64,000 nt of DNA from Girardia tigrina (GCA_001938485.1 MQRK01235862.1:31070-95069), one strand, 5' to 3'; shown: positions 17,936-64,000, counted from the first letter of the stretch. Numbers and translations: made by a program. The notes: generated by a model from the sequence alone, not told the origin.

Positions 17936-18664
17936 GTGGATATTTGTGGACCATTGAAGGAGACTTCTGGGAAAAAGAAATATATTCTAGGCATAACTGA
18001 TCAGTTCGATAAATACATTACGTTATTATCAATATCGAAACAAGATGAAGAGTCGATAATAAAAGGAATAATGCGGAATTGGATACTGAAATTTGGTTCT
18101 CCCAAGGCGATGAATGTGGATTGCGGTAAGGTTTTTGAATCAAAAAAGATGAAAGAGTTTGCAGAGAAACATAATTTTGAAATTAGATTCTCCAGCCCAT
18201 ATCATCATAACACAAACGGACAAATTGAACGTCGATTCCTTACCGTGAGAGAATTGATAAATGCAACATTGCATGAAAGAAGAAGTTCAGACTGGGCAGA
18301 GATTCTACCGGAGATCGAGTTTTCATTAAATGCCTCTTTACAGACGACTATCGAGATGAGTCCAGCTGAAATTATTTTCGGAAGACGCATTAGCAGGGAG
18401 AAATGGGATGGAAGAAATAGCAAGACATTCCAATATGAGCGGGACCAGGAGCCTATCACGCGAAGACAATTCTTCCCAGGAGATGATGTATTGGTAAAAG
18501 TAGAATCTAGAACAAAAGATCGAGGGAGATACGACGGGCCATATAAAGTCGTTCGAAGAGTACATGATAGAAGATATGTTCTTGAAGATATGTCTGGTAA
18601 AACATGTGAAAGAAATGTGGAGAAAATTAAAAAAAATCTTGCGTGCGGGGAGTGTCGTTGTTAA
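17936..18664 (+). CDS. Gypsy integrase core and GPY domain
   Basis: D(ICGP)...D(CG)...E(RRF) catalytic triad, YDGPY motif. Confidence 0.9.
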   Translation: MDICGPLKETSGKKKYILGITDQFDKYITLLSISKQDEESIIKGIMRNWILKFGSPKAMNVDCGKVFESKKMKEFAEKHNFEIRFSSPYHHNTNGQIERRFLTVRELINATLHERRSSDWAEILPEIEFSLNASLQTTIEMSPAEIIFGRRISREKWDGRNSKTFQYERDQEPITRRQFFPGDDVLVKVESRTKDRGRYDGPYKVVRRVHDRRYVLEDMSGKTCERNVEKIKKNLACGECRC

Positions 18665-27601: not shown

Positions 27602-28161
27602 CAATTAAATATAAATAAAAGAATAAAAGTGATTTATATATGATACTGTAAATTGTCCTTTGATTCTAATTTTGTATAATATTTGTATATTTTCTATAAC
27701 TTTCTAATTGTGTATATGTATTTTTTTAATATTGTGTAATAAAGAAATTAATTTATATCGTCGAATTCTTACTTTTCGTACTTTTTTTAATTTGTTTTGA
27801 AAATAAAAATATTTAAAAACAAGTTAAAAAAAATTTAATTTAAAATCATGAAGTGTTTGGGATGTTTTTAAATATTTTTATTTTCAAAACAATTTTAAAA
27901 AAATCATGAAGTGTTTTGGATGTTTTTAAATATTTTTATTTTCAAAACAATTTAGAAAAATCATGAAGTGTTTTGGATGCTTTTAAATATTTTTATTTTC
28001 AAAACAATTTAAAAAAAGTACGAAAAGTACAATATTAAAAAAATACATATACACAATTAGAAAGTTATAGAAAATTTACAAATATTATACAAAATTAGAA
28101 TCAAAGAACAATTTACAGTATCATATATAAATCATTTTTATTCTTTTATTTATATATAATT
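27602..28161. mobile_element. Foldback/MITE-like element
   Basis: ~135-bp inverted arms (27602-27735 / 28029-28161), an inner inverted segment, and three ~57-bp tandem units (ATCATGAAGTGTTTTGGATG...). Confidence 0.75.
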
Positions 28162-28207
28162 GGGAAATTAAAATAAATGCAAATTATTTTTGATCAAGAA
28201 AATAATG

Positions 28208-42290: not shown

Positions 42291-43125
42291 ATATATAAAG
42301 ACGACAAGAGAATGGACTAAAATAATAAAAAGCGTTGAAAATTCTTTGAAGGGTGATGTAAAAAAAATATTCATTAAGCATTCTTAGAAATTATTTTTAA
42401 AAATTTGTTTAAACTATTTTATTTTTTGCATTCTTAATAAATTTTTGTAAATTATTTTACTTTTGATTTGAAATTTTAAAAAAATAAGTTCCTATAAATC
42501 GATCAATTTAACAATAAACTTTACATATTTTTACACATGAATTAATTTTTGAATGGTGCTTATTTCATGTTGTTTGATATATTGTTTATTGATTGTGTTA
42601 CTCCTACCCAGATGGAAGATTGATATTTTAAATATTTTAAAACGTCGGAATATTTAATCAATTTAAAAATGTTACTAGCAACCTTAAAATTAAATAAATA
42701 TATCATAGGTAATTTATTTAAAATATTTTTTTAAATAATTAAAATTATTTTGTATTTTAAATAGTAAATTAGTTCTAAATCGAATTGTAAATAAATTGTA
42801 ATTTAAATCTGTTGAATAATAAGACATTTAGAAATAGAATTAAATTTATCAATCACGAACGATAACTAGTTACAAAATTTTTGTCATAGTGGCAATTCAA
42901 ATTTTTATATCAATAAATGTATTGAAAATTAAATTATGGTTCGCAATAATATTTATTTTAAAAATATTATAATTTTCCAAGTCACTTTTACTTTTACCCT
43001 GTTATGTAATGCTTTGATATAAAATTTATATATAATTCAAAATATCTGATTAAGCAAAAACATAATTCGTTTTAATAAACATAAAACAATATAAAAAAAT
43101 TAACGTCATTTAAAAAATATTTTAG

Positions 43126-43164
43126 GATAATATATTTCGACGGTTTAACCGTCATCATCAGATC
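43126..43164 (-). ncRNA. Minimal hammerhead ribozyme motif
   Basis: Reverse complement of the motif at 46826-46864. Confidence 0.75.
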
Positions 43165-44769
43165 ACTGATTATGTTCTTTTTTTATTGCTTTTATATAAG
43201 AAATGAATGATTGTGTAATCACTTACGTTAGTCTAATCGAAAACTTTTAACAAATTAGTTGAGAGTGTTGTTTGAACATTGATTTTAGGATCACATGATC
43301 TTATCAACAATGCTTCACATGACACTCTCCTAATAATTTTTAAAATGCTTGAACAAAATCTTAAAATCATTTATGCTCATATTATATTTACACGTTTTTT
43401 TATGGTCAGCAATATTACTCTTTCTCCCTTTTTGAATGTGTTCTTGGACTCGTTTGCAGAGATGATGGGCAGTCTCTCCGATGTATGTGGCATTGCAACC
43501 ATTACATGTGTATTGATAAACAATGTCCGAACATAATCCTAAAGGAATATGTGATTTATTGCAAAACATATTCTCAACTTTTAACTTGCTCAATGTATCA
43601 ATACTTTTAATAGATTTTGAAAACGTGGAAGAAAGAGACTAAGGGTGGTATAACAAACCTTTGATCATATTCCTTTTATATTTAAACTCACAAAAACTGT
43701 TTATGGAGGTGTACAAACCAGTATCAGTTTTCTTTCGATATATTTCAGTTTCATAATGTTCATTTTTCCTTTCAATTAACAAATCAAGGAATGGTAATTT
43801 TCCGTTTATTTCCTGTTCTACTGTAAAGATTATTCGTTAGCACTTTTATTTAAAGCGTGTTTAAAATTAGTAAAATTAAAATTAATATTAAAAACCAAAC
43901 ATTACCTCTATTTTCGCCTTTGTTGGGACTAGTAAGTTTTTCCTTCGCGTCAGCCTCGGGCCTATTCATTGCACCGGCACCAAGGCAGACGATGGAAAAA
44001 CTCCCTAAATCTTAAAAAACAAAAAATAAAAAATATTATAATTTATAATTAATTAATTAAAAAATAGAAACTTTTAATTGGTTTTGACCCTTGGATCCTG
44101 TCGATTTGAATATTTTCTTATGATAATTTGATGGCCTGATTTGTTGACGTGGGTTTGATCGGGATTTTGGCCATCTCCAGGTTGTTTCTATGTGAGGACT
44201 GTTGACTTAGTGAAGGATGATTGAAGGTTGACTGTGAGAATTGTCTGCTTGCTGGTTCTGTGAGTTTTTGAGTCGAAAGATTGATATAAATTCATCCGAA
44301 TTTGTGCACTTGATCAGACTTTTTATTGAATAAATTTCATTAGTGAAAAAGGATTTTTGTTTTGAACTTAGGTAATTTTTGGATTTTATTTCCTTTTTTG
44401 AAGTTGATGGAGGTTGGGGAGCACCTCAAGGCTGCCGATCTGTCGATAGATAACGGTAGGGGCTTATAGTTCCTGCCAAGACTATTGACGATCAGGTAGA
44501 GAATATGAACAGGTTGCGAGGTAATTTGATGACTGCCGATCCGTTAATAGATTAACGACAGGTACTTATAGTGCCTGCCGAGACTATTGACGATCTGAAA
44601 GTTTGAGAAAGTCCTTGCCAAGTTTAATTTCTAGAAGAGAATTCGTTTCTCTCAACCTCCATCAATTATTCTTTCTGTTCTTTTTTTTATTTTATTTTTT
44701 GTAATCTACTCATCGTCCTTATTCAGCATGGATAGAAAATATAAAAGCAAATAACAACAAAGAGAACTG

Positions 44770-45192: not shown

Positions 45193-46825
45193 ATGTTTCA
45201 ACAGGCCAAGAATGAGCTGCAAGCTGTTTTTAAAACCAGTCGTATTGAGGTTGACGTCCAAGATGGATAGATGGTAATCAGAAATGACACCAGTCAAAGA
45301 GAGTCTCCTGATTTTGATACCTCGCATAGAATTTCGCTGCTTTTTTAACAAATAATTTTCAAGAGACTATAGAATAACAAGAATGGCTGAACTTTAAGTC
45401 AAAACTTGAAATTCAGAAGGAGATTCGTGACCGCCTACAGTTCCGATCTATCACAACTGGTTAAGGTGAAGAGTTTGTCAATTTATTAGATTTGGATGAT
45501 TAGGGACGATGGGTGGATTGCCTTTGATTAGCATTTTCTTTTGTTATATTTTAATAAAAAATGTCAAAATATAATTTGTTCATATTCTTTAATCTCTGAT
45601 ATGAAAATGATAAACTCATAATAAGAAATATAGTAATCAAATAAAAAAACATGTTGAGAAAGAAATACGATAATCATTAACTAAATAGAAGTAGCATAAG
45701 CCAACTTTCATAGACTTAAGATATTTAAATATAATGAAGAACCCAATAGGTACTTCATCGACTTCACTGGCGAGATGAAAGGGCCAGATGAGGTTGATGG
45801 GGTACGATATGAATCTCTAATAAGTGTGAGTTAGAGACACTTACCGGAGAGACATATCTAAATAATATGTTGGGTCAAAATAAACTAAGATGCTAAAGCA
45901 TAATATGAAACACATAAATTTGAATTAATAAAATTAAAATAATAATATAAAATCCAGCACTAATAATATCACACTCAACACCTTAAACTTATTTTTATCA
46001 AATCTATTTTTAATAGAGTGTTTATGGTCATATTTTAATAATTTGAGTTCATCTTTAGACAAAACTGTCTGACTTAAATTTAAAACAGTATTTTCAACAT
46101 TAAATTTAAATACACCAAACCATTTCCTCAAGTTAAATAATTTTTTATTTTGTGCAGCAATTTTACTTTTATTGGTTTTTTTGGAGTTATTAATCGATAT
46201 AACAATACAAAAATGAAAACAAAAATCATCACTTACATTATGTAGTGCAAATCGAAAGAAAACTGATACTGGTTTTTACACCTCCATAAACAGTTTTTGT
46301 GAGTTTAAATATAAATAGAATATGATCAAAGGTTTGTTATACCGCTCTTAGTCTCTTTCTTCCACGTTTTCAAAATCTATTAAAAGTATTGATACATTGA
46401 GCAAGTTAAAAGTTGAGAATATATTTTGCAATAAATCACATACTCCTTTAGGATTATGTTCGGACATTGTTTATCAATACACATGTAATGGTTGCAATGC
46501 CACATACATCGGAGAGACTGCCCATCATCTCTGCAAACGAGTCCAAGAACACAGTCAAATAGGGGGAATGAGTAATATTGCTGAGCATAAAAAAACTTGT
46601 AAATGTAATATGAGCATAAATGATTTTAAGATTTTGTTCAAGCATTTTAAAAATTATTGGGAGAGAATGTCATGAGAAGCATTGTTGATAAGATAATTTG
46701 ATCTTAAAATCAATTTTCAAACAGCACTCTCAACTAATGTTAAGAGTTTTCGATTAGACTTACGTAAGTGATTGCATAATCATTCATTTCTTATATAAAA
46801 GCAATAAAAAAAGAACATAATCAGT

Positions 46826-46864
46826 GATCTGATGATGACGGTTAAACCGTCGAAATATATTATC
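46826..46864 (+). ncRNA. Minimal hammerhead ribozyme motif
   Basis: GAT-CTGATGA-T-GACGGT(TAA)ACCGTC-GAAA-TATA-TT-ATC. Confidence 0.75.
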
Positions 46865-47599
46865 CTAAAATATATTTTTAAATGGCGTTTATTTGTTTAT
46901 AATAAAAAATTGCCATCTTTTTTCAAGTTTATTTGTAATAAAACAATACAACATTATTTATTCGTTTAAAAAAATATTTAAATTTATTTTTCTTGTCATT
47001 TCTATTCTTAGCAAATGATATTTAGAATGAAGTAATATAAAAACTGCTTTTCTTTATACACAAAGTTTTCTATTCATTTATAAAACTGTTCATTTTAAAC
47101 TATTCATTTATTAATACAACATTTTTAATCTGAAAGGAAATCTTATTAGAAATAATGAAATAATAACTTGTGTCTTTGATACTTAAAACTGCGGCTTTTA
47201 AGAAGTATTTGAAATAATAAATTTTTGTTAAAGACTTTGACGGCTTAAAAATTTTCTTGACGTGAGTAGAACTGACCTGCAGTTTTAAAGCAAGTGCAAG
47301 ATTTCAAACTAAAAAAACCATTGCATTGTTAAGACTAACTCGACGTTGACTAATTCAAGTGTACAATTGGTTAAATCAAAGGATCTAAAAAGCTTCGTGC
47401 GACAAACGTTTGGAATCTAAATTAAATATTATATGACTTATAAGGCCATTGAAAAAAAGGAACATTGAGAAAAAATGGGTTTTACTTAATTCTTACTTGT
47501 ATTTCAGCGTACTAGTTTTGCAACCTTGCATGACATTGATTGTTAACATTATATACAAATCGAAAATGGTACATTTTAAAGGATTTTTCACTGGGCCAG

Positions 47600-47810: not shown

Positions 47811-50800
47811 CAGATTGTCCTTTAAAAAATGTCGTTTTTACAAATCCAGATAATATAGAAATAACTTTGCACCAATGTAATTCAAAAATAAAATTTCACA
47901 AAATTACCATAATGCTGAATGACCAGCTGGCAGTGGTGTTTCAGTTTATCAAACTCATGTCTCAAGATCTAAATACTCATAATCTCCTTGGAATCTTCCA
48001 GGAGGTCTCCAAGGAATGAGAATCAACGAAAACGTTATTTGTGCGACGCATTTCCTGGAGAGGGAATATGAGGTAGTAGCAAATTTTAGTGTCAGGAGAG
48101 TATGTAGGTTGGTTAAGACGATGGCAACGTTTCGTCTCAGGGAAGGTGGTAGTTGCCCTGAATACATAGGCTGGCGCATTTTCATGAATCATCATCGTAT
48201 TTTCCCATCGGGCGGCTTTTCTTGTTGACAGCCCAAAGACCCATCCACTTCTTCGCCATGGGCATTTGCCTGATTATTTGAGGAACATCACCGTCCGGGG
48301 GAATCAAAGCTTTCCTAGAAGCTGCTTTCCCAATTCCACACGCATAAAATTCCTTCTCAACAGTAAAGACAAGGTTTTTCTGCATGTTTCCTTTGTCCAT
48401 CACCTCCACAATTTTCTGGTAGGATTTCCCCCCGCGTTCTTTGTGCACATCAGTCAGATTGTGTGGGATCCACTTGCAGTGAACATTGCGAAATCCAAGG
48501 TCGTTGGGAATGATGATTATAATCACCTGTCTTTTAGAATATTTTAGCATTTCCAATGCCAAATGTAGAAGAAATGCTAAATACATTAAATGGAGCAAAA
48601 TACTTCAGCACAGTCGATTTGGGGAGTGAATATTATCAAGTTGAATTGGAAAACGATTCAAAAATAAAAACTGCATTTTCGACAAAGAACGGCCAATAAT
48701 GTTTTAAAAGAATGCCATTCGGAATTGCAGCTGCCTCATTGACATTTCAAGAAACTAATGACAAGAGTGTGAGGAGAATTAAACTGGAAAGAAGCAGTTG
48801 TATACCTGGACCATATTCTAATCTTCGCAAAAGACAAAGAAGAACATTTCAGACGAATCGAACACATATTTCAAAAGATTAAAGAATCGGGCCTTCGGAT
48901 AAACCCTGAAAAGTGTCAATTCATGGTAGAAAAGACAAAATGTTTAGGATATGTCGTGAGCAAAGATGGTATAGAGACGGATAAAACGAAAATTGAAGCA
49001 ATTTCAAAATTTCAAAATCCTTCATGCATTAAACATTTAAGAAGTTTCTTGGGGCTAACGAACTATTATAGAAAATTTTTGAAGGATTATGCAAAATAAT
49101 CAAAAATACTGGAAGGGCTATATGGAAAAAATAAAGATAAAAAATTGACATGGATAAAGGAATGTGACGAAGCATTTCAGACATTAAAAGATAAAATGAC
49201 AAAAACACCGATCCTAGCATATCCAGATTTCGAAAAGTAGTTTATACTGGATACAGACGCCAGTTTTGATACAATCGGGGCATTACTTGCACAGAAGGAT
49301 GCATATGAAAGGGAAAGAGTAATTGCCTATGGATCCCATAAGATGAACAAACACGAAATGTGATACTGTATTACAAGAAAAGAATTATTGGCAAACTAGT
49401 ACTTTACCCAAAACTTCAAACATTTCTTATACGGAAAGAAGTTTCTACTTAGAACGGACTATAAGGCTATCACATTCATGATAACAACGAAGAACCCAAT
49501 AACTCCACAATTCAAAACTTGGATAAACTTCCTTAGTGGACTTGACATGAGGATGGAATACCGCAAGGGCAAAAAACACACCAATGCAGACGCAATGTCG
49601 AGAAATATATGTGGACCATGTGTACAATGTCAAACAAGGCACAATGACGCTAAAAAAGGAAAAGTTTAAACTAGAGTCCTAGCATTTACCGAAGATTCAG
49701 AAGAGTTCATTTGGCAGACGAATGATGAAGAAATATAACAGATTAAAGAAAATATTAAAATTGGAAAGACAAAAGAATGGCTACTGAAAATCAATATCAT
49801 GACGACAAGAGATAACAAATATTGGATCCCTATGAAGAAGAGAAAAGACTTTATAGAAGATATACATAAAATGTTATGATTGCCTAAGTAAGAAAGTATG
49901 CAATTACATAAAAGATGATTTCGATATGTTTGAAATAGGACACCAGATAAAGAAAATCATACAAAGTTGCGAAAACTGCCAGAAAAGGAAGACGCTGACG
50001 GCAAAAACGAAAGAGAAACACATTAAACAATCTGCCGAAGAACCATTTCAAAAAATTTACATGGACTTTTGCGGACCATTCAGAAGGACTATGAATGGAT
50101 ACCAATACATTTTAGCAATAATCGATCAATTTAGTAGGTACATCAGCTTGACCGCAGTTGCACACCAAGACGAGAAGACTACACGAAAGGTACTATTAGA
50201 GAAATGCACTTGGAAATTCGGACAACCAAAAGAGATACACGTTCATAGAGGGAAAACTTTCGAATCAGCACTCTTTAAAGAAACGACGAAGAAATTTAAG
50301 ACAGAGATAGTCCACTCAAGCCCTTATCACTATAACACTAAAGGGATCATAAAAAGACAATTCAGAACAATAAGAGATGCCATAAATATACTATTAAAGG
50401 ATGAAATGCATAATAGACACAATAATAGACATTCGAGAGTCAGCCAATAATTCAGCCTTCACTTCTTCAACTAATTGGTGTCTTTTCTCGGTTTTTGGAC
50501 GACCACTTTCTTCAGTGCGATCCAATGATGTTCTAGGGCCATCTTCAAACTCTTTCACTATTCTTTGAACTTGTCGAAGTCCGATTATATTTTCCCCCGA
50601 TGCCGTTGTAAGACGTTCGTGTGTTTTGCTTCACTGCATTCCATTTCTGCGACAGATTTCAATCACAACGTTTAGCTGTTCAGCAGACGGTTACCGCATT
50701 CTGTACTGTAAATACGTGAAAAATAATTGTATTAAAATTAATTAAACTCAAAAAATTTATACAATACTTATAGAAATAAGTTACATAATACAGAATTATA

Positions 50801-51122: not shown

Positions 51123-51965
51123 CGAGGGGTGTCACAAAAGTTCACGGACTGATAAGTAACAACAAATTCAAAAAGTTTATTCTAGTTAACAAAACTGATC
51201 AATCCTCATCAGACTCGCTATCGAACTTTTCAATATAATCACCATTCAGTTTCACACACTTTTCTCATCTCTGTGTCAACTTTCTAATACAATTATCGAA
51301 GAAAATAAGCGGGGACTCCGCAAACCACGCACTGACTGCTGTTTTCATTTCATCTAAATTCGCGAAATGATGCCCTCAAAGTGGTTTCTTCAATGCCGAG
51401 AAAAGGTGATAATCACTCAGCGTGAGGTCCGGTGAATATGGGGGGTGAGGAAAAAGGGTCCAGCCCAATCGTTGCATGGTACTGACAGTCAACTTCGCTG
51501 TTTGGGGACATGTGTTGTCCTGTTGCAATAATGGGATGGATGACAACTTTCCCCGCCGTTTGTTCTTGAGAGCTTTGCGTAGATCTTTATCGAGCAGGTT
51601 CGTGTAGTATGCGCTATTGATGGTGACCCCCTTTGGCAGGTTCTCAATGTTAATTATCCAATTACAGTCCAAAAAGACTGTAACCATTACATTCCCGGCT
51701 GAAGGGACGATCTTCGCCTTTAAAGGGGGTCTGTCAACTGGACGGCACCATTGACGGGACTGCTCCTTGGTTTCAGGAAGATTAAACGGGAGCCACATTT
51801 CGTCTGCTGTCATAATCTGTGACCAGACGCCTCACCGAGATCATGAACCAGTTGCAGCAGTTCTTGACAGACAGACTTTCGATTAACCTTCTGGTCGTTG
51901 TTGAGGAGGCGCGGTACCCACCTGGCAGTCAGTTTCCTCATATGCAGCTCCTCTGGCATGATGCC
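51123..51965 (-). mobile_element. Mariner (DD34D) 3' half with TIR
   Basis: 'RWVPRLL', 'TADEMW', 'LQQDN', 'HPPYSPDLTLSDYHLF'. TA-CGAGGGG terminus. Confidence 0.9.
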
Positions 51966-54900
51966 AAAGTAAAGGCCATTTGAATCTTTATCTGGAACCA
52001 ATCTATTGGCAAGTTGTGCGATCCCGCTGCGGTACCAATCCTTGTTCTTAGAAGCGAAGAAGTGGTGATACCCGTTTTCGACCTCGGCCAGATTATTGAA
52101 GCTGCGACCACGGAGAAAGTGTGCCATAGAGCGAAAAAGGTGATAGTCGAATGGTGCAAGATCCGAACTATACGCTGGGTGTGGAAGATTAATCAATTAT
52201 TTCTCGCTTTCAATGGCGTCGAGATTTTTGATTTTTTTCCTTTGTTTGCTTGGTGGTGTGCGGTTTTGCATTGTCCTGTTGTAGAAGAACTCGCTTTCCA
52301 TTGATTAAAGCGGAGTATTTCTCGCCAAGTGCCGCATCCATTCGATCAAGTTGGGCGCAGTAAAGGTCAGCGTCGATGGTGCGACCATTTGGAACCATCT
52401 CGAAGTGAATCACGCCTTCGAAATTCCACCAAACACACAAAAGTGCCTTCCTTGAGAAACAATCTCGTTTCGCTACCGGTTTCGCCATTTGTCCGGCGTC
52501 CAACCATTGATTTTGTTGGTCTGGATTACTGAAGTAAACCCACTTTTCATCGCAAGTTACAATTCGACGGATGAAACGGTCATCGCGCGGATTTTCAAGC
52601 AATTTTTGACAAGTTTCGAAACGCTTTTCGGTTTGAATTTGTGTCAATTCATGAGGCACTTCTCGACATCATGTCACGACCCTTCTGAGCACAAACATTT
52701 TTGAAAGCTCTTGAGCCCCCAGTGGCTATTAAGGATCAGCCACAACCCTACGTCTATTTTGATATTCACTTGTATCTACCTATATAATGGGTCGGACGTT
52801 TCTTCTCGCTCGACATCTGCCTGGCAGTGCCGAGTTTGAAGGACCTTCCGGTTCTGATAAAGATGGGATGAGCTATGGGCCCCCAACCTACAGAGTGTCG
52901 CTCGGGGATGATCTATCTATATTTTTCAGAAGTATTGCGTTCGAATTTCTCTTTGTATTTTAAACTTGTCGCACCGTCATGTGTACTAGACTTGTGGCAC
53001 GGTAATATGTTAGTCATGCTAGACTTGTGGCACTATTATGTGCTTGTACGTTTATGCTCTGTGGAACTTGTGGCAATGTGGAATTAGCTTAACCTACAGC
53101 ATATCGACAATCACTTGTCCCCTTATTAGTTTTATATTGTTACGCCGCCTATGATTATTTATCGAGATTTTTATCTATGTTGTAAAGCTTATATTGGTAT
53201 CGTTAATTCATATCCGCTACAAACTCATCTTATAACGCAACATTAGCCATGAACTTCCAGTTTAAAACAAGAAACTAGGGAAATTAATAACTCAATCGCA
53301 TTACCTCGAATAGGTAAACTCTTAATAGTCGATTTTAATTCAATTATATCTAAGTATTCACAAAATCCATATCAGATTAAAATTAAAGACCAATAAGTTT
53401 TCCCAAAAGAAATCTTAATAAAGTTTTCAGTAAAATTATCGATAACATTTTTGACGAAATTTCCAACAAAATTTCTAGCAAGATTCGTCTTATCACCAGA
53501 ACGAAATATGGACAATTTCGATTCAAATCAAATTGTCATCAACTTAATTTATTAATTTACTCGCAAAAATTTATTAATTACTAGTTATAACTCGTTATAA
53601 TTTACGTGTTAGATTAAACCTTAATCAAATCAAATCGCTTTTAAAATCATTATAGAAATTGTCAAAATTATCAAAATAAATAGAAATTGTCATGTAATTT
53701 AAGTCGAGCAATTCCAATTCTGAAATCCTTTAAAGTTTTCATGAATGAATAATAAACGGATAAACGTAAAATCATCAAATGTAAACTATCAAATGTCTCT
53801 TAAATACCATTAAAATCATTTAGCACCAAAAAATAGAAATTAAAAATTAAAATTATATTTGTTTTAGTATATCAATTATATCTAAAGGTCACGTCAAGGG
53901 TTCGAACTTCTGGAAGACCGAGACTCCCCTAACCGGTCGTCAGATCGTTCGGCCAATATGAACCGGGGACTCTATCCCGGCAAGAATCGACTCAACGGGA
54001 TCGATTTGGTTAAACGTATCGAGGGAGATCGACATTACGTCGACGATCATCGGGACCACGTGGTCCCCATCTCTCTTTAACAGCTCAGGTGATTGGGAAT
54101 CCAGTTGGGGCATTTACGGCGAAAGTTGACGGCGGCGACGACGGGCGTTCGTTACTTTTTAATACGGGAAGGTAATTTATTCCTGTAGTGGTTCAATTAA
54201 CAATAATAGTGGTTAAATAAAAATTCATAGATAAAAACATAAGTCGTATATAAAAATTCAAATTATAATTTAAACCGAAATTTACATTTATAACAGGATT
54301 TTCTTATTATGGCAAAGCGGATTCGGAGGAATGCTCGTCGGTTTCTCTTCGAATATTGTCGTGTAGAGATGGTTCTCTTATTGCTTGATCGCGTCGGTAT
54401 CGGGTGATCGTCCTGGCGTCGAATGTTACCAAGTTCTCGTCTCTTCGTTACGGATGTTTCGCTCGTCGGTTCAATTACCTATCAGTCGCTCTGATCTCAA
54501 TTGATTTCTTCGAAGCCTTGCGAATGTAAGTGCGTTCCATTCGTGAAAATCGTTGTCTTTAGAATTGCTTTTGAAATTGTTTTGTTATTTTATGGACGCA
54601 TGTTCTAAGAATGTTTGTCACATTTATAGGGCTGGTGAGACACCCTGTTAATCCTCGTGGACCAATCGACTTCTGCCAGGCAAGTGTCTGGACTTTTCTC
54701 GTGAGCTGATTCGTCGATTCGGGTAAGTGTGTTTCGATAAAAATTTTTAAAATTTGAAATTTTTATTTTATTATAGGAATCGATGTCGGTGTGTCGTGGC
54801 ACATCTGCAAATTCTAGAATCCGTGTGCGGCTGTGTCACCGATAACTCGGTTAAAATTTTCGGCGATGTCTATTATTATACTGGCCGTTGAGTCATGGTA

Positions 54901-57293: not shown

Positions 57294-57736
57294 TTAATCG
57301 ATATTGATATAATCATCCCCGCGCGATTCTCGGCTAGTTGGAAAGCACATAGTCTTTTCCCAACTAAATTGAACCTGAAGATGCTCCAGACCTGGTACTA
57401 CTCGTTCGATGTCAGGCGAGGGAGGCACATCCGACCACCTAGTAAAGTGAATATGTGAAAATAATTGCGGGACATATCTGATCGTGGTTGACACTTAACA
57501 ACCACTAGGGGCACATGAGCTTTCAAAAATGTTATTGCTCGAAGGGGTTTTGACAAAATTCTCTCCATTTTCATGCGATAGTAGAATTCTTCAACAACTA
57601 ACTTCTGTTGATCTTTCTGAGGCTCCTCATGAAAAACCTGTTTTACTACCTCACATTTTTACATCTTTGTCACCCTGTGCACTATCGTAAATAACTTCCT
57701 CATCAAGGTCAAATTGACCTTAATCACAATTCAAAA
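57294..57736 (-). pseudogene. Accessory ORF remnant running across a PPT into the start of an LTR related to 52672-55459
   Basis: 57555-57294 aligns with 52672-52930 (ACATTTTTGAAAGCTC...AGTGG..TTAAG; GTCGGA; GGGGATGAT). Purine tract GAAAATGGAGAGAA lies just upstream. Confidence 0.6.
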
Positions 57737-58267
57737 CTGAAAAAATACTCTTTAATAAAGCTAAAATAGGATAAAGTTCTACTGAACTCTTGACTACAGC
57801 AAAAGTTCCATGTAGGCTTCGAAATGTTATTCATAATGTGAAAAGGTAAGTGGAAAATAAGTAGTGTTCAGTAAATAGTGAAAACAGTTGCCAAATGATT
57901 TAAATAAACAAAGAACGACAATGTATAACGAACCGAATCATGATAAAAATGAAATCTTTCCACATTTGTCATAAGATGATTTCGTTTTAGAAATTTTGAA
58001 TTTGATATTTCAACGATGGAATTTGATTATACTGTTATTTGTGTGAATTACGAGGATCTATAAAAATGAAGATAAAAACAAGACTTCAAAATTTACAAAT
58101 ATATATTTAATTATGTACACGAGTTACAATTTCAAACAAAATCAATATTTAGATTCTTAGACCTTATTTAGATTTTGTAATTTGGATAATGGGACCACAA
58201 TGTTTTGTTAATCCCAAGGTAATTTAAAAGATATATATATATATATATATAATTATATAATCGTAAT

Positions 58268-58770
58268 TGTCACGTCCTTCGTACTTTTTTATGATTCTCG
58301 TTTCGCTCTAGTGTTCAATTTTTTACTCTCTCTTTAGTTACGATAATCGACACCTTTTATAAGCTTGACTTGAATAAATTATCTCCGCGTGAGGTGTCGA
58401 ATGAATAATTTAATACTTGAAATATAATTCTGATCTTCTCTTAATCTTGTACTTGTTAATTACTTTGACCTTGAACTTTCAAAATATTTTGTCGTACTTT
58501 TTGTGCGCTTTTCTTCTTTTTCTTCTACCTTTTATATTACTTTCCTTGATATATAATTCTTCTTATTTATCTTATTTACAGTTCTGTTTATCCTTTTAAT
58601 ATAAATACCTTATTTTCAAATTCTGAATATTTATGTCTAAAATTCAATTAAATCTAATTATTTTTATATAATTTATATTTATTATAGTAAAGAGGTAAAT
58701 AATCTTTTATTATACCTATTTAATTAAAATAAATATTAATTGTTAAAATTTATATTTTATATACCTAACA
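58268..58770 (-). repeat. Putative 3' LTR of the exonuclease-carrying element
   Basis: TGTTAGG...CGTGACA on the minus strand, TATAAAAGG followed by GAGAGAGT, and an upstream GGGGAC...ATTTT motif typical of gypsy 3' ends. Confidence 0.65.
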
Positions 58771-58926
58771 ATTCGTCGGGGGGCGATAAAATTTATGTCC
58801 CCATAAATAAAACAATCAAAAGTACTATACATATGAAAGAATTTGAGATATACATAAATCAAGATAAGAAAAGATAGGATACACAAGATAAAAATGAAAA
58901 TCAATCAAATCAATAAAATGTTATTG

Positions 58927-61290
58927 TTAATCATCATCCTCAGTTAGATCAATCGGAAGTTCATTGAAGGGATCGTTCTGAAAACTCGGTTCCATCTTCA
59001 CAGGATATGGATGCGGCGAGTACCATGGTTGATCCGTGTTCCGCGGAGTCACTCGAAAACCCTCATCGATGTCTACCTTTTGGAGGAGAGGCGGGGTAGA
59101 ACGAAGACCGCCTGATTGGCCTCGGTACCAACGATTGTACCTAATGATATCTTCGTCGTTCCGAAAGAAGCGGTTTCCTTTAACGACAGGTGCCGGTTGA
59201 TCGCTGATGTAAGGGGGAGTGACGAGTCGTTGCTGGGTACATATAAGACTTTCGGAAGGGTTAACAATCGTACAGGAAGAAAAAGCGACGTGAGAAGGTG
59301 AGAAAACCTTTGCAACCTTCTCCGGATGACGACCTAATGTCCCCTTTGACCAACGCTTAGCTTTAATGATTATGGTCCTAGGTTCTTCAAGGGTATTCTC
59401 CAATATTTTAGGGGCGAGCCTCTCAGAAATCGGAGTTCGCGTGCCGGACAGAACCCTTAACTGGTCTGGATGAGGCGGTGGAGGCATTTCCTCCAAGGTA
59501 GGTATATAAACGGGACATGCATCCGGATCCATTGGTGGTAACTCGTATTCGAAATAATTCAAAGGAGCAAAAAGGTCCAATACATCAGCCTGTGGGGTAT
59601 CAACCTCCTCTCTGGCAGAATGAAAGGATGTTACCGAAGATATGTCAGAAAGTGCCTTAGACATCCTCCAATAATTGGCATCCAACCATTCTTCCGCCGT
59701 GGAAGAAGGTGGTCCGTGAGTTTGTGGAGGTGAGTTCTCAAATAAATTTGAGGCATGGGTAGGGGATAAATCATCCATCCACCTACTTTCTACTTTCCGA
59801 TAAATTCTACGTAGGGCGTCTGTATCCTCATGGGAATTATGGACATGGATCTGAATTTGTTCCTTAAGGATATCCCATGCCAAAGCCTTTAAGCCAAAAA
59901 AACTACCATTATTTTTTGGTTTGAGACCCATCAAGTGAAAAACTTTAGCCTTGGTGGTATCGCGAATTCCTAACAGAGTGTGAGTGGGTATGGCCAATCT
60001 TCTGATCTCCATTTGGATATCATGACCTACAAGTATGTTGCCATATAAATGTCGGTGTAGCTCTGCAATTACCTCATATTCATCCGCAGAACCTATGAGG
60101 CTGCCATCTTCCAACCCATGACACTCGGTGGCCCAATCAGTTATTCTAGTACGGAACCTAACTCGAGTGTTCATCAATAATTTTCCGTTGAAATTCATGA
60201 GCGTAATTGCCGCTACATGAAACCTCTTATCTGCATCTTTTACAAATTCCGCGTCAAGAAATCTCAAGCGAAGCCTAATGTCCTGTAAGGAGAGGTTTTT
60301 TCTAATAAAAGATGACCTTTGGGCGACCAGATTTTCGCTAACTTGAAAGTCCGAATTAATCTGAATATGCGAGAGCTGGTACCACGGGTTTGGCACATCA
60401 TCCTGGAGCAAAAACTCTACGGCTAGGACAGATATTTCTTTAGGGGAGGATATGTAGATGTCATTTATCTGTTCTGCCACATCGTCTTCCAGGTTCTCAG
60501 CGATGTCAATTGCAATAGAATGCAATTTCGGGACATTTACCAATACCTTAGTGTCGCTGACAATGAGAGGGGCAGAAGCAGCGTGGATACACAAGGTAAT
60601 TATTCTGTAATGTGGATTATTAAATGTTGTGGGTATACTGTGCCTGTATAATCCCATTATATCGGAAACCTTCCATCTTCGTGTCACGGTAGTCTTTATT
60701 ACTACCATTTTTTTGTTTAGGTCATTATAAATCAGCCGGTTTTGGTAAAATCTAGGTGAAGGATACACTGCTACAAACAATTTCTCCATGATCCTAGTCA
60801 AACCGGACTGGACGTCACGATAGAAGGTGTTGCCATAATGCATAGATCGTATGGCTAAACCGAACAATTTTGTGGACTGGGCCGAGATAGGCTCGTTGGG
60901 TGTCCAACTAGAAGGTAAAGGAATCTCAATGGGACAGATGGGCTGTTTCAAGAAAGCGCGTATGAGTCTATCCTTACATTCCTCTCTGCGCGTAAGTATG
61001 TCGAGGTGAGGTTTCTCTTTATTGATTCGAGTATCCCTAACAACAACTGGTAACTCCTCACAATGGCGATCAACCAGTTCCTTACGATTTCGATATTGGG
61101 AAAAAGAAAGATTATAGTCATAAGACAGCTCATTTTGATCGAATGTTTGATGAAAGTCATTATATTTTTGATTCATTTTGGTAAGAAACAGTTGAGAGGA
61201 TTGGGAAACTGGATGCATCTGCAAAATAGAAAACATTAACTTATTGTGCACATTTGCACGAATTAGAAAAGAAAAGAAAAAATTCAACAC
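58927..61290 (-). CDS. Accessory protein with a REX4/ISG20-like DEDDh 3'-5' exonuclease domain (probable ATG at 61218)
   Basis: 787 uninterrupted codons. ExoI 'FLDAEFV', 'ITDWATECHGL', ExoII 'ILVGHDIQME', 'IRDT', 'GLKALAWDILKEQIQ', ExoIII 'HNSHEDTDALRRIY'. Confidence 0.85.
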   Translation of the reverse strand: MLNFFFSFLIRANVHNKLMFSILQMHPVSQSSQLFLTKMNQKYNDFHQTFDQNELSYDYNLSFSQYRNRKELVDRHCEELPVVVRDTRINKEKPHLDILTRREECKDRLIRAFLKQPICPIEIPLPSSWTPNEPISAQSTKLFGLAIRSMHYGNTFYRDVQSGLTRIMEKLFVAVYPSPRFYQNRLIYNDLNKKMVVIKTTVTRRWKVSDIMGLYRHSIPTTFNNPHYRIITLCIHAASAPLIVSDTKVLVNVPKLHSIAIDIAENLEDDVAEQINDIYISSPKEISVLAVEFLLQDDVPNPWYQLSHIQINSDFQVSENLVAQRSSFIRKNLSLQDIRLRLRFLDAEFVKDADKRFHVAAITLMNFNGKLLMNTRVRFRTRITDWATECHGLEDGSLIGSADEYEVIAELHRHLYGNILVGHDIQMEIRRLAIPTHTLLGIRDTTKAKVFHLMGLKPKNNGSFFGLKALAWDILKEQIQIHVHNSHEDTDALRRIYRKVESRWMDDLSPTHASNLFENSPPQTHGPPSSTAEEWLDANYWRMSKALSDISSVTSFHSAREEVDTPQADVLDLFAPLNYFEYELPPMDPDACPVYIPTLEEMPPPPHPDQLRVLSGTRTPISERLAPKILENTLEEPRTIIIKAKRWSKGTLGRHPEKVAKVFSPSHVAFSSCTIVNPSESLICTQQRLVTPPYISDQPAPVVKGNRFFRNDEDIIRYNRWYRGQSGGLRSTPPLLQKVDIDEGFRVTPRNTDQPWYSPHPYPVKMEPSFQNDPFNELPIDLTEDDD

Positions 61291-61340
61291 AATTATAGCG
61301 AAATATATAATTGCAAGGCTCGTACAGCCAAAAATGATTT

Positions 61341-62539
61341 TTATACCTGTGTTTCCTCTACGTACACTCCTGGCAGGTATTTCTCCAAGGAGGTACGATA
61401 TAAGTTTAAAGCCGTTTGTTTCTTTTTATATTTTCTATACAAGAATAATATGTGCCACATTATTAAAGAACTGAGCGAAAACAGTCCTAAGCTGAACAAT
61501 ATGAATGGCCATATGTGTAATTGTAAGTTTTTGTGAAATATTGTATGATCATTTGTTCTATAAAAGATAGATTGAATTTTTGTTAAAGAATCGGAGTCAA
61601 TAAATTTCTCATGTGTTTTTACTTGTGGTAAGGTAAATAGTGAACTATATTGTACAAAAATATCCCATGAAAGACAGTGAACTGTGAGGTTTGATTCTGG
61701 ATTATCTATTAATGTTTTCTGTCGTGACCATTTTATTTCGAACGCTGCTGTTAAAGCTATTTCTCTGTAGATAAGAACATACATATTTGTATGATTCTGG
61801 TATCCGTCAAAATATATTGCGCTAAGTTCATTATTATTTTGCCAATAACATTGTCCTAGACAAATCTTGAAGGAATATTTATTGTTACAAGCTCCGATAT
61901 TAACAAGGACGGTATGTGGGACAATTTGTATTTGAATTTGTCGTTCTTTTAATATCGTTTTCGATGTTGCACTTACGCCTCGTAAAATAAAAGAGAGAAT
62001 AATCAATATGATTAATCTCCAATATTTAGGGTTAAACATTTGATTCCTATTTATCTGCTCTTTCTTTTTCTTTTCCGTGATCATGGTATTTCCGTTTCCC
62101 TCATCATTTATTGTTAATCTCTTTTGATGCTGATTATGTAATTTCAGACTTAATATTTCATCTTTTCCTTTTTGTGTATTTAGTTGTCTAATTCGATCTA
62201 AATCTTGGTGCCTTACGTATGAAACAACGGCCTTCTTTCCATCTCGTGATATAATATCATTATTTTCGATTATCTCAAAGACTGATTTTACTAATTCTGA
62301 ACCGTATTTCTTACTATATTCGGATGCGGTGTTTCCATGCTGATCCAAAAGCATCAAATTTGAATATATAATAAGTGGTGCTACAACTGTATGAAAGGGT
62401 GCTCGATGTATTATTGCTTCCATTAACGCAGTTAATCCATCATTTCCTTGAGTATCTATTAATCCTGGATACTCACATAACTTTATCTGTTTAAGTAACT
62501 TTGCAGCTTTGTGAAATTTATGTCGAATTATAACAATTA
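61341..62539 (-). CDS. Ankyrin repeats, internal signal sequence, Cys-containing ectodomain and C-terminal TM (env-position ORF); 5' end broken by a Helitron
   Basis: 'GNDGLTALMEAI', 'DQHGNTASEYS', 'KYWRLIILIILSFILRGVSA', 'IWPFILFSLGLFSLSSLIMWHILFLYRKYKKK'. Confidence 0.75.
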
Positions 62540-62866
62540 CTAGTAAATAACCCGTCATGTATGACGGGTAAAATTGAGAAAAGAAATTTCATTTTTTAAT
62601 TTTAATTTGAGTAATTTTGGATGTGGAACAGATGCATTAAAACAAAGAAGACNNNNNNNNNNNNNNNNNNNNNNNNNNNNNNNNNNNNNNNNNNNNNNNN
62701 NNNNNNNNNNNNNNNNNNNNNNNNNNNNNNNNNNNNNNNNNNNNNNNNNNNNNNNNNNNNNNNNNNNNNNNNNNNNNNNNNNNNNNNNNNNNNNNNNNNN
62801 NNNNNNNNNNNNNTTATTAATATAAATATCTACTTACAATTGTAAGTAGATAATATGAGCGTTAGT

Positions 62867-62905
<39 letters not shown>

Positions 62906-62929
62906 TGAGTGACTTGGGCTTTTATAAGA
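62540..62929 (-). mobile_element. Non-autonomous Helitron
   Basis: 5' TC(TTATAAAAGCCCAAGTCACTCAC) with (TGCC)n, 3' hairpin CCCGTCAT-AC-ATGACGGG then CTAG. Inserted between A and T. Spans an N gap. Confidence 0.8.
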
Positions 62930-63043
62930 TAAAATTAATGGTGTAGCATTCCATATTGGATCTTTTACAGCAAATAAATGTGGGTATTTTCTTACCGCAC
63001 ATTTGAAGAACTGGTCATTATAAATGTATCCTTTCGCGAAATG

Positions 63044-63321
63044 TTATCCAATATCTTCCTGTAACACTAAAATAGTTTCATCTTCTTTACTTTGCTTTTG
63101 TGATAGTTGTATTTTATGATCAATTTTTCTATCTTTTGATACTGGTAGATTAATTTCTATTACTGCTATTTCATCTGATTGAGTTTGTGATCGGAGATTA
63201 TATCTTTTAACTGGCTCATTTTCCGCCTTTTTACATCTATTTATGTGTACAACTATTGGATCAGTGTTCTTGTTTTTTATTATAAATAGATTTGTGGGTG
63301 TCACTTTGACAACCTCATAAG
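63044..63321 (-). pseudogene. Gypsy integrase C-terminus (GPY/F-type)
   Basis: 'YEVVKVTPTNLFI...PIVVHINRCKK...RYNLRS'. Confidence 0.75.
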
Positions 63322-64000
63322 TATTACGGAAACGGACTAGTGGGGCAAAGATTACTACTAACCCGCCTACGCAATCTTATAATAGACCAAATAAAAAAAG
63401 TATATACACAACTGTCGAAAATATAATTATATATATAAACAATTATCAACAGATGACAGCCAGGAAAAGAAAGGAGTCGTTTGATCACAAAAGAATTATG
63501 TCGATAACACTAGCGAAAGCCAAAACAGATTTGTCACAAAAAACAAACAAAATGTTTACTTCAAACTGAGGCTTCGACAAACGCTCTTGGACTGAGATAT
63601 CGATATTCGGCTAAGGTGCCAAAAATGTCGTAGCTCGATTGTCTGTTCCGTTCGATTAGATTGACGACTGTCTTTGTTCTTCTCGAAAATTAGGATTCTT
63701 CTATTAATTGCCCTTGATCGGTGGTTATGATTTGTCAGATGTATAGTCCTGTCTCCGGATTCTTAAAATAGTCCACTGGATTAAGGAAACCAGTCGACGG
63801 CGATTTTGAACCGGAATTTTATTATTCGGCGACTTTTACCGATGTCCTAACGATGGATCAGTAATTATAGAGATCACGATATCGTTAAGATTATTTTGAA
63901 TTTTGATTTAATTTTTTTTAATTGTTCGATCAATCGTTTTTATTGATCATTTTTAATTTTCATATTAATTTTATTATTGTCATTGGCAATATTCCAATGA
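63322..64000. repeat. Probable LTR-type insertion interrupting the integrase
   Basis: The integrase frame is lost abruptly at TATTACGG (...CCGTAATA on minus, like the TG...TA LTR ends). The sequence is non-coding and CpG-rich. Confidence 0.4.

What the first reader, a model, noticed from the sequence alone, without database searches (positions are those of the whole stretch)
58268..63321. Gypsy retroelement with two cargo genes: ankyrin/env-like membrane protein and REX4/ISG20-like exonuclease
Seen: on the minus strand the order is integrase C-terminus, Ank-signal-ectodomain-TM ORF, 787-codon DEDDh exonuclease ORF, then an LTR-like TG...CA unit, all co-oriented and tightly packed. Known: gypsy elements normally have at most an env here, and giant LTR elements with extra ORFs (Burro) occur in planarians. 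Inference: this is a virus-like retroelement that captured a cellular exonuclease and a membrane protein. Possible roles are degrading immunogenic or silencing-trigger nucleic acids (as the arenavirus NP DEDDh domain does), proofreading, or cell-to-cell spread. I do not know of this combination being described.
Basis: partly seen in the sequence, partly recalled or inferred. Interest (0 to 1): 0.92.

Follow-up and report, generated by a model that had tools for sequence, protein, structure and literature searches.

The report
Retroelement tail carrying exonuclease and membrane genes
The region is the 3' end of a gypsy-type, virus-like retroelement that carries two conserved extra genes after its integrase, a small membrane glycoprotein and an ISG20/REX4-type RNA exonuclease; exonuclease cargo was known in rotifer retroelements, but of a different exonuclease class.

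Summary
The two minus-strand ORFs are real. ORF-A is 405 codons. ORF-B is 763 codons from its likely ATG, or 787 from a table-11 GTG. Shuffled sequence never gave more than 195 open codons. ORF-B has a confidently modelled ISG20/REX4-type DEDDh exonuclease domain with all catalytic positions filled. ORF-A has two membrane-spanning segments, a small glycosylated Cys-containing ectodomain and a conserved tail ending T-Q-V. Its ankyrin region is only weakly supported, and nothing links it to fusion (env) proteins.

The stretch upstream of the gap matches an integrase C-terminus (E 6e-12) from an intact gag / env-PR-RT-RH-IN element that carries a related exonuclease ORF after pol. Three independent distant relatives put this exonuclease family next to retroelement genes. 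The A-then-B module recurs in five metagenome lineages, under purifying selection and with signs of recombination.

Not confirmed: the LTR, since no second copy is in the window. Continuity between the integrase piece and ORF-A is also unproven because the gap lies between them. The rest of pol is absent from the window.

Verdict: a retroelement accessory-gene module, and a new variant of a known kind. Rotifer LTR elements carry DEDDy exonucleases and KolobokD DNA transposons carry DEDDh ones. The function is inferred, not shown.

The parts
63044..63331 (-). pol remnant: an open piece that encodes the integrase C-terminal domain and the pol stop. The rest of pol is not recognisable in the window (one truncation).
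   Evidence: tblastn against the pol of L007 gave 51% identity, E 6e-12, and against L009 45%, E 2.5e-10. The stretch 63332-64000 shows no integrase similarity (E>=0.9 on both strands alike) and has 13-17 stops per frame.
62868..62905 (.). (AGGC)9.5 microsatellite between the pol piece and the gap. A 26-nt perfect palindrome at 62827-62852 abuts the gap.
62653..62813 (.). Assembly gap (161 N) between the pol piece and ORF-A. It was neither filled nor looked up.
61341..62558 (-). ORF-A, 405 aa. Weak ankyrin-like N-terminus (aa 29-130; 62169-62474). Hydrophobic segment 1 (aa 179-200), directly preceded by a Met (aa 174) and followed by a signal-cleavage-like site. Ectodomain of about 146 aa with 4 Cys and 2 N-x-S/T sites (61521-61958). 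Transmembrane segment 2 (aa 347-373). A 32-aa tail ending T-Q-V.
   Evidence: The tail is invariant in 3 aligned lineages.
61314..61386 (-). Non-coding-level conserved block across the ORF-A stop. Synonymous sites are conserved. A predicted 13-bp hairpin lies at 61361-61397. The stop is embedded in a 5'-splice-site-like CAG|GTATAA.
   Evidence: The structure is not proven: no compensatory changes were seen.
58927..61218 (-). ORF-B, 763 aa from the ATG that relatives share (the table-11 ORF begins at 61290). Helical N-terminus (60934-61218). Beta-rich domain of unknown fold (60319-60921). DEDDh ISG20/REX4-type exonuclease domain (59749-60291). Disordered Pro/acid-rich tail (58930-59721). A pyrimidine-rich ...CAG acceptor-like site lies directly before the ATG.
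58773..58809 (-). Second conserved non-coding block, about 120-150 nt after the ORF-B stop. It is nearly invariant in four lineages and contains a G-run. It is a candidate polypurine-tract/LTR-start region, unproven.
58268..58926 (-). Homology to relatives runs at least to about 58665. The end of the element is undefined. (AT)14 lies at 58231-58259 just beyond it.

Best explanation
The region is the 3' end of a 5'-truncated copy of a gypsy/Ty3-type retroelement. The copy may instead be interrupted upstream. Its relatives have the gag / env-PR-RT-RNaseH-IN layout described for flatworm, nematode and bryozoan errantivirus-like elements and for planarian Burro.

After the integrase the element carries a conserved two-gene accessory module.

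ORF-A is a membrane glycoprotein. Both ends would be cytosolic, or it would be type I if translation starts at the Met just before the first hydrophobic segment. Its invariant tail ends in T-x-V, which fits the class I PDZ-binding pattern.

ORF-B is a multidomain protein whose core is an ISG20/REX4-type DEDDh 3'-5' exonuclease with a complete active site (D322, E324, E404, H460, D465).

Shown: the gene order, the fold, the conserved catalytic positions, purifying selection, recurrence of the module, and pol linkage of the wider exonuclease family.

Inferred: ORF-B is translated from a spliced subgenomic RNA, because an acceptor-like site sits in front of its ATG. It trims or degrades RNA 3' ends for the element's benefit, most likely by removing host silencing or sensing RNAs or by-products of the element's own replication. 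ORF-A directs element proteins or particles to membranes or cell contacts. It is not the fusion protein.
For: Integrase C-terminal match to exonuclease-carrying elements.

Exonuclease-family members next to retroelement genes on all three independent contigs long enough to tell (L007/L010, L008, L009).

A-then-B linkage in the window plus L001/L003 (87-nt identical overlap), L002, L004, L011 and L012.

Purifying selection: ORF-B pN 0.23 against pS 0.85 versus L001, and omega about 0.10 versus L005. ORF-A C-part omega is 0.16 versus L011.

At least two diverged lineages in each of three samples, and mosaic divergence: window versus L011 gives pS 0.19 in ORF-A but 0.84 in ORF-B.

Catalytic columns are kept in 23-24 of the 28 aligned family sequences.

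AlphaFold pLDDT exceeds 90 over aa 300-490. Foldseek gives ISG20 TM 0.83 and ISG20L2 TM 0.79, and also returns PAN2 and SDN1.

Named cellular relatives are Rex4.

In L007 and L009 the pol C-terminal extension after the integrase has the same TM - glycosylated Cys region - TM - tail architecture, ending T-Y-V and T-D-V.

Precedent for exonuclease ORF3s in LTR elements: PMC5408684.
Against: Pol, gag, the 5' LTR and the primer-binding site all lie outside the window or are missing.

The gap separates the integrase piece from ORF-A.

No close relative of the A-B module was recovered on a contig that also holds pol; all of those contigs are under 3 kb.

No sequence homology was found between ORF-A and the membrane extensions of L007 and L009.

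The window protein's Pfam RNase_T score (22.1) is just below the gathering score of 24.

Copy number in the source genome is unknown, and both metagenome scans returned nothing.

No expression or splicing data exist. The substrate and role of the exonuclease are pure inference.
Confidence: 0.75

Rival explanations
1. The two ORFs are a domesticated gene pair. They came from a retroelement but the host now keeps them, while the element around them has been lost.
For: Within the window pol is reduced to its last 96 codons, while 3.6 kb of ORF-A and ORF-B is fully open. Purifying selection is strong. Every contig with a close relative shows only the A-B pair.
Against: The retained pol piece is itself open, so no differential decay is needed. 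Each of three samples holds at least two diverged lineages, and there is a recombination-like mosaic. Contigs break at the shared conserved block, as expected for multi-copy repeats. Relatives lie next to intact pol. The close-relative contigs are too short to hold pol either way.
Confidence: 0.12
2. ORF-A and ORF-B are two exons of one gene. A phase-0 intron of about 125 nt runs from the CAG|GTATAA at the ORF-A stop to the ...CAG in front of the ORF-B ATG. Splicing would give one membrane-anchored protein with a cytosolic exonuclease. This could hold in addition to separate expression.
For: The donor-like site is invariant in four lineages, including the 35-40%-identity L004. The acceptor-like site with a pyrimidine tract is present in the window, L001 and L002. 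The junction would be in frame. Conservation around the ORF-A stop exceeds coding needs.
Against: No splice predictor or RNA data were available. The L004 acceptor is poor. L007 and L009 lack the donor-like sequence at the equivalent stop. The invariant T-x-V end suggests that the free C-terminus matters. I searched each ORF separately and did not build the joined model.
Confidence: 0.12
3. The A-B module belongs to a different mobile element or virus, and lies beside an unrelated integrase fragment only because of the assembly gap.
For: The gap and a microsatellite separate them. No contig joins pol to a close A-B relative.
Against: The integrase fragment's best matches are the integrases of the elements that carry the related exonuclease ORF (51% identity in a usually poorly conserved domain). 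The order integrase - membrane module - exonuclease is the same in L007 and L009.
Confidence: 0.05

Closest known systems
Rotifer Juno/Vesta LTR retrotransposons with a DEDDy exonuclease ORF3 (Rodriguez, Kenefick and Arkhipova 2017, PMC5408684)
   Same: A gypsy-like LTR retroelement carries a separate 3'-5' exonuclease ORF downstream of pol. Small transmembrane ORFs occupy the same position in related families. The third acidic catalytic residue is Glu there as well ('DEED' in that paper).
   Different: Those are RNase D-like DEDDy enzymes. ORF-B is DEDDh (His460, five residues before Asp465) of the RNase T/ISG20/REX4 branch. It is much larger (763 aa, with an extra N-domain and a disordered tail) and is paired with a conserved membrane protein.
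Planarian Burro/GYPSM1 and GAG-ENV-POL errantivirus-like elements of Platyhelminthes, Nematoda and Bryozoa (PMC6431247, PMC13524379)
   Same: The pol-linked relative L007 has the fusion glycoprotein in frame upstream of protease, as described for Burro. Burro carries ankyrin repeats and accessory ORFs. The host sequence is AT-rich and repeat-rich.
   Different: The texts I could read mention no exonuclease for these elements. Membership of the window copy cannot be tested because gag, env and pol are not in the window. L007 has gag as a separate ORF, and its polyprotein is 3003 aa, not about 4900.
Cellular REX4 / ISG20 / ISG20L2 (and PAN2, SDN1) DEDDh exoribonucleases
   Same: The fold (TM 0.79-0.83), the catalytic D-E-(D/E)-H-D positions and the R-D-T-type motif after Exo II all match. 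The named relatives in the big search are 'RNA exonuclease 4'.
   Different: Identity is only 22-23%. ORF-B adds about 300 N-terminal and 270 C-terminal residues that have no detectable relatives outside the element family. The genomic context is a retroelement.
KolobokD DNA transposons encoding a DEDDh (DnaQ/TREX-like) exonuclease (PMC9587614)
   Same: A mobile element carries a DEDDh exonuclease as an accessory gene.
   Different: That is a DNA transposon, and its exonuclease is TREX/ERI1-like rather than ISG20/REX4-like.

Membership tests
Ty3/gypsy (Metaviridae) LTR retroelement | pol with PR-RT-RNaseH-IN in that order | tested here: inconclusive
   Only the integrase C-terminal domain is present in the window. 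The full order is seen in the relatives L007 and L009 that carry the related exonuclease ORF.
Ty3/gypsy (Metaviridae) LTR retroelement | paired long terminal repeats with target-site duplication | not testable with these tools
   The 5' end lies beyond the window. No second copy of 57500-58926 exists in the window. No genome of the source organism is on hand.
Ty3/gypsy (Metaviridae) LTR retroelement | polypurine tract at the 3' LTR boundary | tested here: inconclusive
   A conserved block with a G-run lies at 58773-58809 in four lineages. No LTR start can be fixed.
DEDDh (RNase T / ISG20 / REX4) exonuclease | RNase T-type fold | tested here: met
   AlphaFold pLDDT exceeds 90 over aa 300-490. 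Foldseek gives ISG20 TM 0.83 and ISG20L2 TM 0.79, with rmsd about 3 A.
DEDDh (RNase T / ISG20 / REX4) exonuclease | catalytic D, E (Exo I), D (Exo II), H and D (Exo III) | tested here: met
   D322, E324, E404 (17 Glu and 7 Asp in that column), H460 and D465 are kept in 23-24 of 28 aligned family sequences. The Glu at the third position is a conservative change.
DEDDh (RNase T / ISG20 / REX4) exonuclease | Pfam PF00929 score above the gathering cut-off | tested here: inconclusive
   The window protein scores 22.1 against a cut-off of 24. Relatives pass: L007 28.4, L008 27.5, P0008 35.9. A family profile hits ISG20L2 at E 1.6e-13.
DEDDy exonuclease ORF3 of rotifer LTR elements | Tyr-type Exo III motif, RNase D-like | tested here: not met
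   Exo III has a His five residues before the Asp. The best matches are ISG20, REX4 and PAN2, not RNase D, WRN or Rrp6.
Retroviral/errantiviral Env (fusion glycoprotein), for ORF-A | homology to a class I/II/III fusion protein | tested here: not met
   No Pfam hit at E<=1. No PDB sequence hit for aa 171-405 at E<=10. The structure model was too poor to search (pLDDT 39).
Retroviral/errantiviral Env (fusion glycoprotein), for ORF-A | signal sequence, glycosylated ectodomain, membrane anchor, furin-type cleavage site | tested here: inconclusive
   A signal-like segment, 2 N-x-S/T sites, 4 Cys and a transmembrane anchor are present. There is no R-x-K/R-R site, and the ectodomain is only about 146 aa.
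Ankyrin-repeat protein, for the ORF-A N-terminus | match to ankyrin repeat models | tested here: inconclusive
   Pfam found nothing at E<=1. There is a single PDB match to the MIB1 ankyrin region, E 0.01, over aa 29-130.
Burro-type giant gypsy element | env in frame between gag and pol within a giant polyprotein | not testable with these tools
   That part of the element is not in the window. The relative L007 has PF24664 (E 5e-80) upstream of protease in one 3003-aa ORF.

The most novel reading that the evidence does not exclude
A whole, so far unannotated clade of gag-env-pol retroelements encodes its own ISG20/REX4-type exoribonuclease as a counter-defence or fidelity factor. It would either remove the small-RNA or nucleic-acid signals by which the host silences or senses the element, or support unusually large retroelement genomes, in the way a DEDDh exonuclease is thought to do for the largest RNA viruses. 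It would work together with a membrane protein whose conserved T-x-V end engages host PDZ polarity or junction proteins.
Probability: 0.12. Interest if true: 0.85.

Novelty: new variant of a known kind. Interest (0 to 1): 0.55.

Why it matters
Host DEDDh exonucleases such as ISG20, TREX1 and the PML-like enzymes are known as restriction factors against viruses and retroelements. Here a retroelement lineage carries an enzyme of the same branch itself, with an intact active site and under purifying selection.

That makes an old question descriptively testable: why do some LTR elements acquire nucleases? The candidate answers are RNA 3'-end processing, evasion of small-RNA silencing, and fidelity.

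The finding also extends the 'extra ORF3' repertoire beyond rotifers, from DEDDy to DEDDh.

The recurring membrane module with a T-x-V end after the integrase suggests a second conserved accessory function in elements that already have a fusion glycoprotein.

None of the 20 closest pol-type family members I looked up has a name or an NCBI accession. The clade therefore seems to be missing from annotated protein sets.

Tried and rejected
Metagenome scans. Both scans of metagenome contigs, one with the ORF-B alignment and one with the ORF-A alignment, found nothing.

Rfam. No family matched the whole window.

Arenavirus NP likeness. Structure searches against PDB and BFVD returned ISG20, ISG20L2, PAN2, SDN1, DnaQ, RNase T and TREX, plus exonucleases of giant viruses and phages. 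No arenavirus nucleoprotein came back, so I claim no specific likeness.

PAN2. Its UCH-Exo module tops the PDB list with long alignments but a poor overall fit (TM about 0.2, rmsd 17-20 A). By sequence only the exonuclease domain matches. A PAN2-like two-domain origin of the N-domain is a lead, not a result.

Integrase core read by eye. I read a possible integrase-core motif in 63332-64000 by eye and rejected it. tblastn gives only noise there, on both strands alike.

ORF-A structure. The prediction failed (pLDDT 39), so I made no fold search for it.

ORF-A versus the pol extensions. No homology was found to the pol C-terminal membrane extensions of L007 and L009 (hhalign probability 0.2%, BLASTP E 0.6). 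Only the architecture and the T-x-V end are shared.

LTR. I searched for repeats of the tail within the window and in the other loci and found only (AT)n matches.

RNA structures. Structures in the two conserved non-coding blocks have no compensatory support.

Source organism. It could not be identified. Run and sample accessions are in no paper of the library, and protein names give no organism for the close relatives.


Full report
OBSERVATION

On the minus strand the window holds the following features, from right to left:
- an open 96-codon piece at 63044-63331;
- an (AGGC)n microsatellite at 62868-62905 and a 26-nt palindrome at 62827-62852;
- the assembly gap at 62653-62813;
- ORF-A at 61341-62558 (405 aa);
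- a 122-nt spacer;
- ORF-B at 58927-61218 (763 aa from the ATG that its relatives use; the '787 codons' count from a table-11 GTG at 61290);
- an AT-rich tail.

In 200 shuffles of this stretch the longest open run was 195 codons, so both ORFs are far beyond chance.

GAP

The gap lies between the pol piece and ORF-A. Two in-frame stops separate it from the ORF-A ATG, and the pol piece ends in its own stop 230 nt before the gap. No ORF of the finding crosses it.

Whether the two sides are contiguous cannot be tested. No relative that I recovered spans this junction.

POL PIECE

Positions 63176-63331 match the integrase C-terminal domain of the intact polyprotein on L007 (51% identity, E 6e-12) and of L009 (45%, E 2.5e-10).

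Upstream, 63332-64000 shows no integrase similarity: E is 0.9 or worse, and equally bad on both strands. Each frame there has 13-17 stops. In this window pol is therefore reduced to its last domain by one truncation. A motif I thought I saw there by eye was not supported.

ORF-B

Pfam gives RNase_T just under its cut-off (22.1 against 24). PDB sequence searches give ISG20L2 and ISG20 (E 6e-7 for the protein, 1.6e-13 and 5.7e-11 for a family profile).

An AlphaFold model built on a 28-sequence alignment is confident for aa 300-490 (pLDDT above 90) and fair for a beta-rich domain at aa 100-300. It shows disorder from aa 500 to the end.

Foldseek finds ISG20 (TM 0.83), ISG20L2 (TM 0.79), the PAN2 exonuclease module and SDN1, followed by DnaQ, RNase T and TREX. 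In the viral library only giant-virus and phage DEDDh enzymes come back.

The catalytic positions are D322, E324, E404, H460 and D465. They are kept in 23-24 of the 28 aligned family sequences, and the third acid is Glu in 17 and Asp in 7. Named cellular relatives further down the exhaustive search are 'RNA exonuclease 4'.

The N-terminal 300 residues and the C-terminal 270 residues have no relatives outside the element family.

ORF-A

There is no Pfam hit at E<=1. The N-terminal 170 aa have one weak match, to the MIB1 ankyrin region (E 0.01). The rest matches nothing solved.

Hydropathy shows two membrane segments, at aa 179-200 and 347-373. Between them lie about 146 aa with 4 Cys and 2 N-x-S/T sites and no furin-type site. 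A 32-aa tail follows.

A Met sits directly before the first hydrophobic segment, here and in L003, and is followed by a small-residue cleavage-like site. A shorter type I product is therefore possible. The last 30 residues, which end T-Q-V, are nearly invariant in three lineages. The structure model was too poor to use.

RELATIVES OF THE MODULE

Only short metagenome contigs carry close relatives.
- L001 and L003 share an identical 87-nt overlap.
- L002, L004, L011 and L012 all run from the end of an ORF-A homologue into an ORF-B homologue.
- L005 holds an ORF-B 3' half.

Each of the three samples holds at least two diverged lineages.

ORF-B evolves under strong purifying selection in all three of its parts. 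Against L001, pN is 0.23 and pS is 0.85; omega is about 0.10 against L005.

Window against L011 is mosaic. ORF-A's C-part has pS 0.19, while the adjacent ORF-B has pS 0.84. This points to recombination between lineages. In L011 the ORF-A homologue carries one in-frame stop.

WIDER FAMILY AND POL LINKAGE

The exhaustive profile-free search found 762 proteins at E<=0.001. The top 30 or so share the exonuclease domain plus 50-100 residues before it.

All three independent contigs long enough to tell carry retroelement genes next to the exonuclease ORF:
- L007: a gag zinc knuckle, then one 3003-aa ORF with a viral fusion glycoprotein domain (PF24664, E 5e-80), protease, RT, RNase H and integrase, then the exonuclease ORF.
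- L009: RT-RNase H-integrase, then the exonuclease ORF.
- L008: the exonuclease ORF, then about 2.1 kb, then gag.

L010 is the same locus as L007 on a second contig. Its pol is split into at least seven called ORFs.

In L007 and L009 the roughly 430 residues after the integrase have the same build as ORF-A's C-terminal two-thirds: a hydrophobic segment, a Cys- and N-x-S/T-rich stretch, a second hydrophobic segment, and a tail ending T-Y-V or T-D-V. No sequence homology to ORF-A could be shown.

The order integrase - membrane module - exonuclease is thus a clade feature. The true fusion protein lies elsewhere, between gag and protease.

CONSERVED NON-CODING FEATURES

A 73-nt block across the ORF-A stop (61314-61386) is nearly invariant, even in the 35-40%-identity L004. 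It includes synonymous sites, a predicted hairpin (61361-61397) and a stop embedded in a 5'-splice-site-like sequence.

The ORF-B ATG is preceded by a pyrimidine-rich ...CAG in the window, L001, L002 and L007. This fits expression from a spliced subgenomic RNA. It would also allow an in-frame A-B fusion. I searched the two ORFs separately and left the joined model out.

A second block at 58773-58809, which contains a G-run, is invariant in four lineages. It is a candidate polypurine-tract/LTR-start region.

The LTR itself could not be verified.

LITERATURE

- Rotifer Juno/Vesta LTR elements and Athena Terminons carry DEDDy exonuclease ORF3s, with the third acid also changed to Glu (PMC5408684; PMC6431247).
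- Burro has env in frame between gag and pol, ankyrin repeats and accessory ORFs. The text mentions no exonuclease.
- GAG-ENV-POL elements are described in Platyhelminthes, Nematoda and Bryozoa, with no mention of a nuclease (PMC13524379).
- KolobokD DNA transposons carry a TREX/ERI1-like DEDDh exonuclease (PMC9587614).
- I found no paper describing a DEDDh exonuclease in an LTR retroelement. Repbase entries and figures could not be checked.

VERDICT

The feature is real. It is best read as the accessory-gene end of a gypsy-type, env-bearing retroelement, and as a new variant of a known kind. The function of both genes is inferred.

STEPS LEFT OUT AND SLIPS

Slips:
- The identification of the first 23 residues of P0003 as adapter-derived also rests on memory.
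- Nothing was built from it.
- One search printed the three-frame translation of 62814-64000 as it stands. I list no places of breaks.

Noticed in passing
window 61344-61439; L007 about 9570-9636; L009 about 3840-3915: The membrane proteins or extensions that follow the integrase all end in T-x-V: T-Q-V in the window family, T-Y-V in L007 and T-D-V in L009. This fits the class I PDZ-binding pattern, although the three show no detectable sequence homology to one another.
   Followed up: partly
window 58930-58960 (ORF-B C-terminus): The last residues of ORF-B are conserved in all close relatives: a short hydrophobic stretch followed by an acidic run. From memory this resembles SUMO-interaction motifs. 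Not tested.
   Followed up: no
window 61341-62558 versus L011: Divergence is mosaic. ORF-A's C-part is 92% identical in protein to L011 (pS 0.19), while the neighbouring ORF-B is saturated at synonymous sites (pS 0.84). This suggests recombination between element lineages near the conserved inter-ORF block.
   Followed up: partly
window 15094-19583 (+): Another gypsy-type element with a gag zinc knuckle, protease, integrase core and a 189-aa ORF without a family. Direct repeats of about 220 nt at 15094-15314 and 18651-18873 (91-92% identity) lie only 3557 nt apart, and RT seems to be missing.
   Followed up: no
window 5278-7375 (-) and 48547-50450 (+): Two related gypsy pol fragments (protease, RT/RNase H; integrase) lie in inverted orientation, 73-85% complementary, about 42 kb apart.
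   Followed up: no
window 51376-52659 (-): A mariner-type transposase (PF01359) is split over at least three ORFs.
   Followed up: no
window 43109-43739 and 46251-46881: Inverted repeat arms of about 630 nt, 91-96% complementary, enclose about 2.5 kb. This may be a terminal-inverted-repeat or foldback element.
   Followed up: no
window 27602-28162: Three tandem copies of a 58-nt unit (27842-28017) are flanked by 134-nt inverted arms that are 97% complementary.
   Followed up: no
window 62827-62852 and 62868-62905: A 26-nt perfect palindrome abuts the assembly gap and is followed by (AGGC)9.5. Such sequences may be why the assembly broke here.
   Followed up: no
L003 1-71 (P0003 residues 1-23): The start of this metagenome contig and of its called protein looks like library-adapter sequence read as protein (identified from memory). 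I left it out of the alignments used for searching.
   Followed up: partly
L007 and L010: Two contigs of one assembly carry the same element next to the same prolyl-4-hydroxylase-like host gene. The polyprotein is one intact 3003-aa ORF on L007 but is split into at least seven called ORFs on L010. They may be haplotypes or an assembly-quality difference.
   Followed up: no
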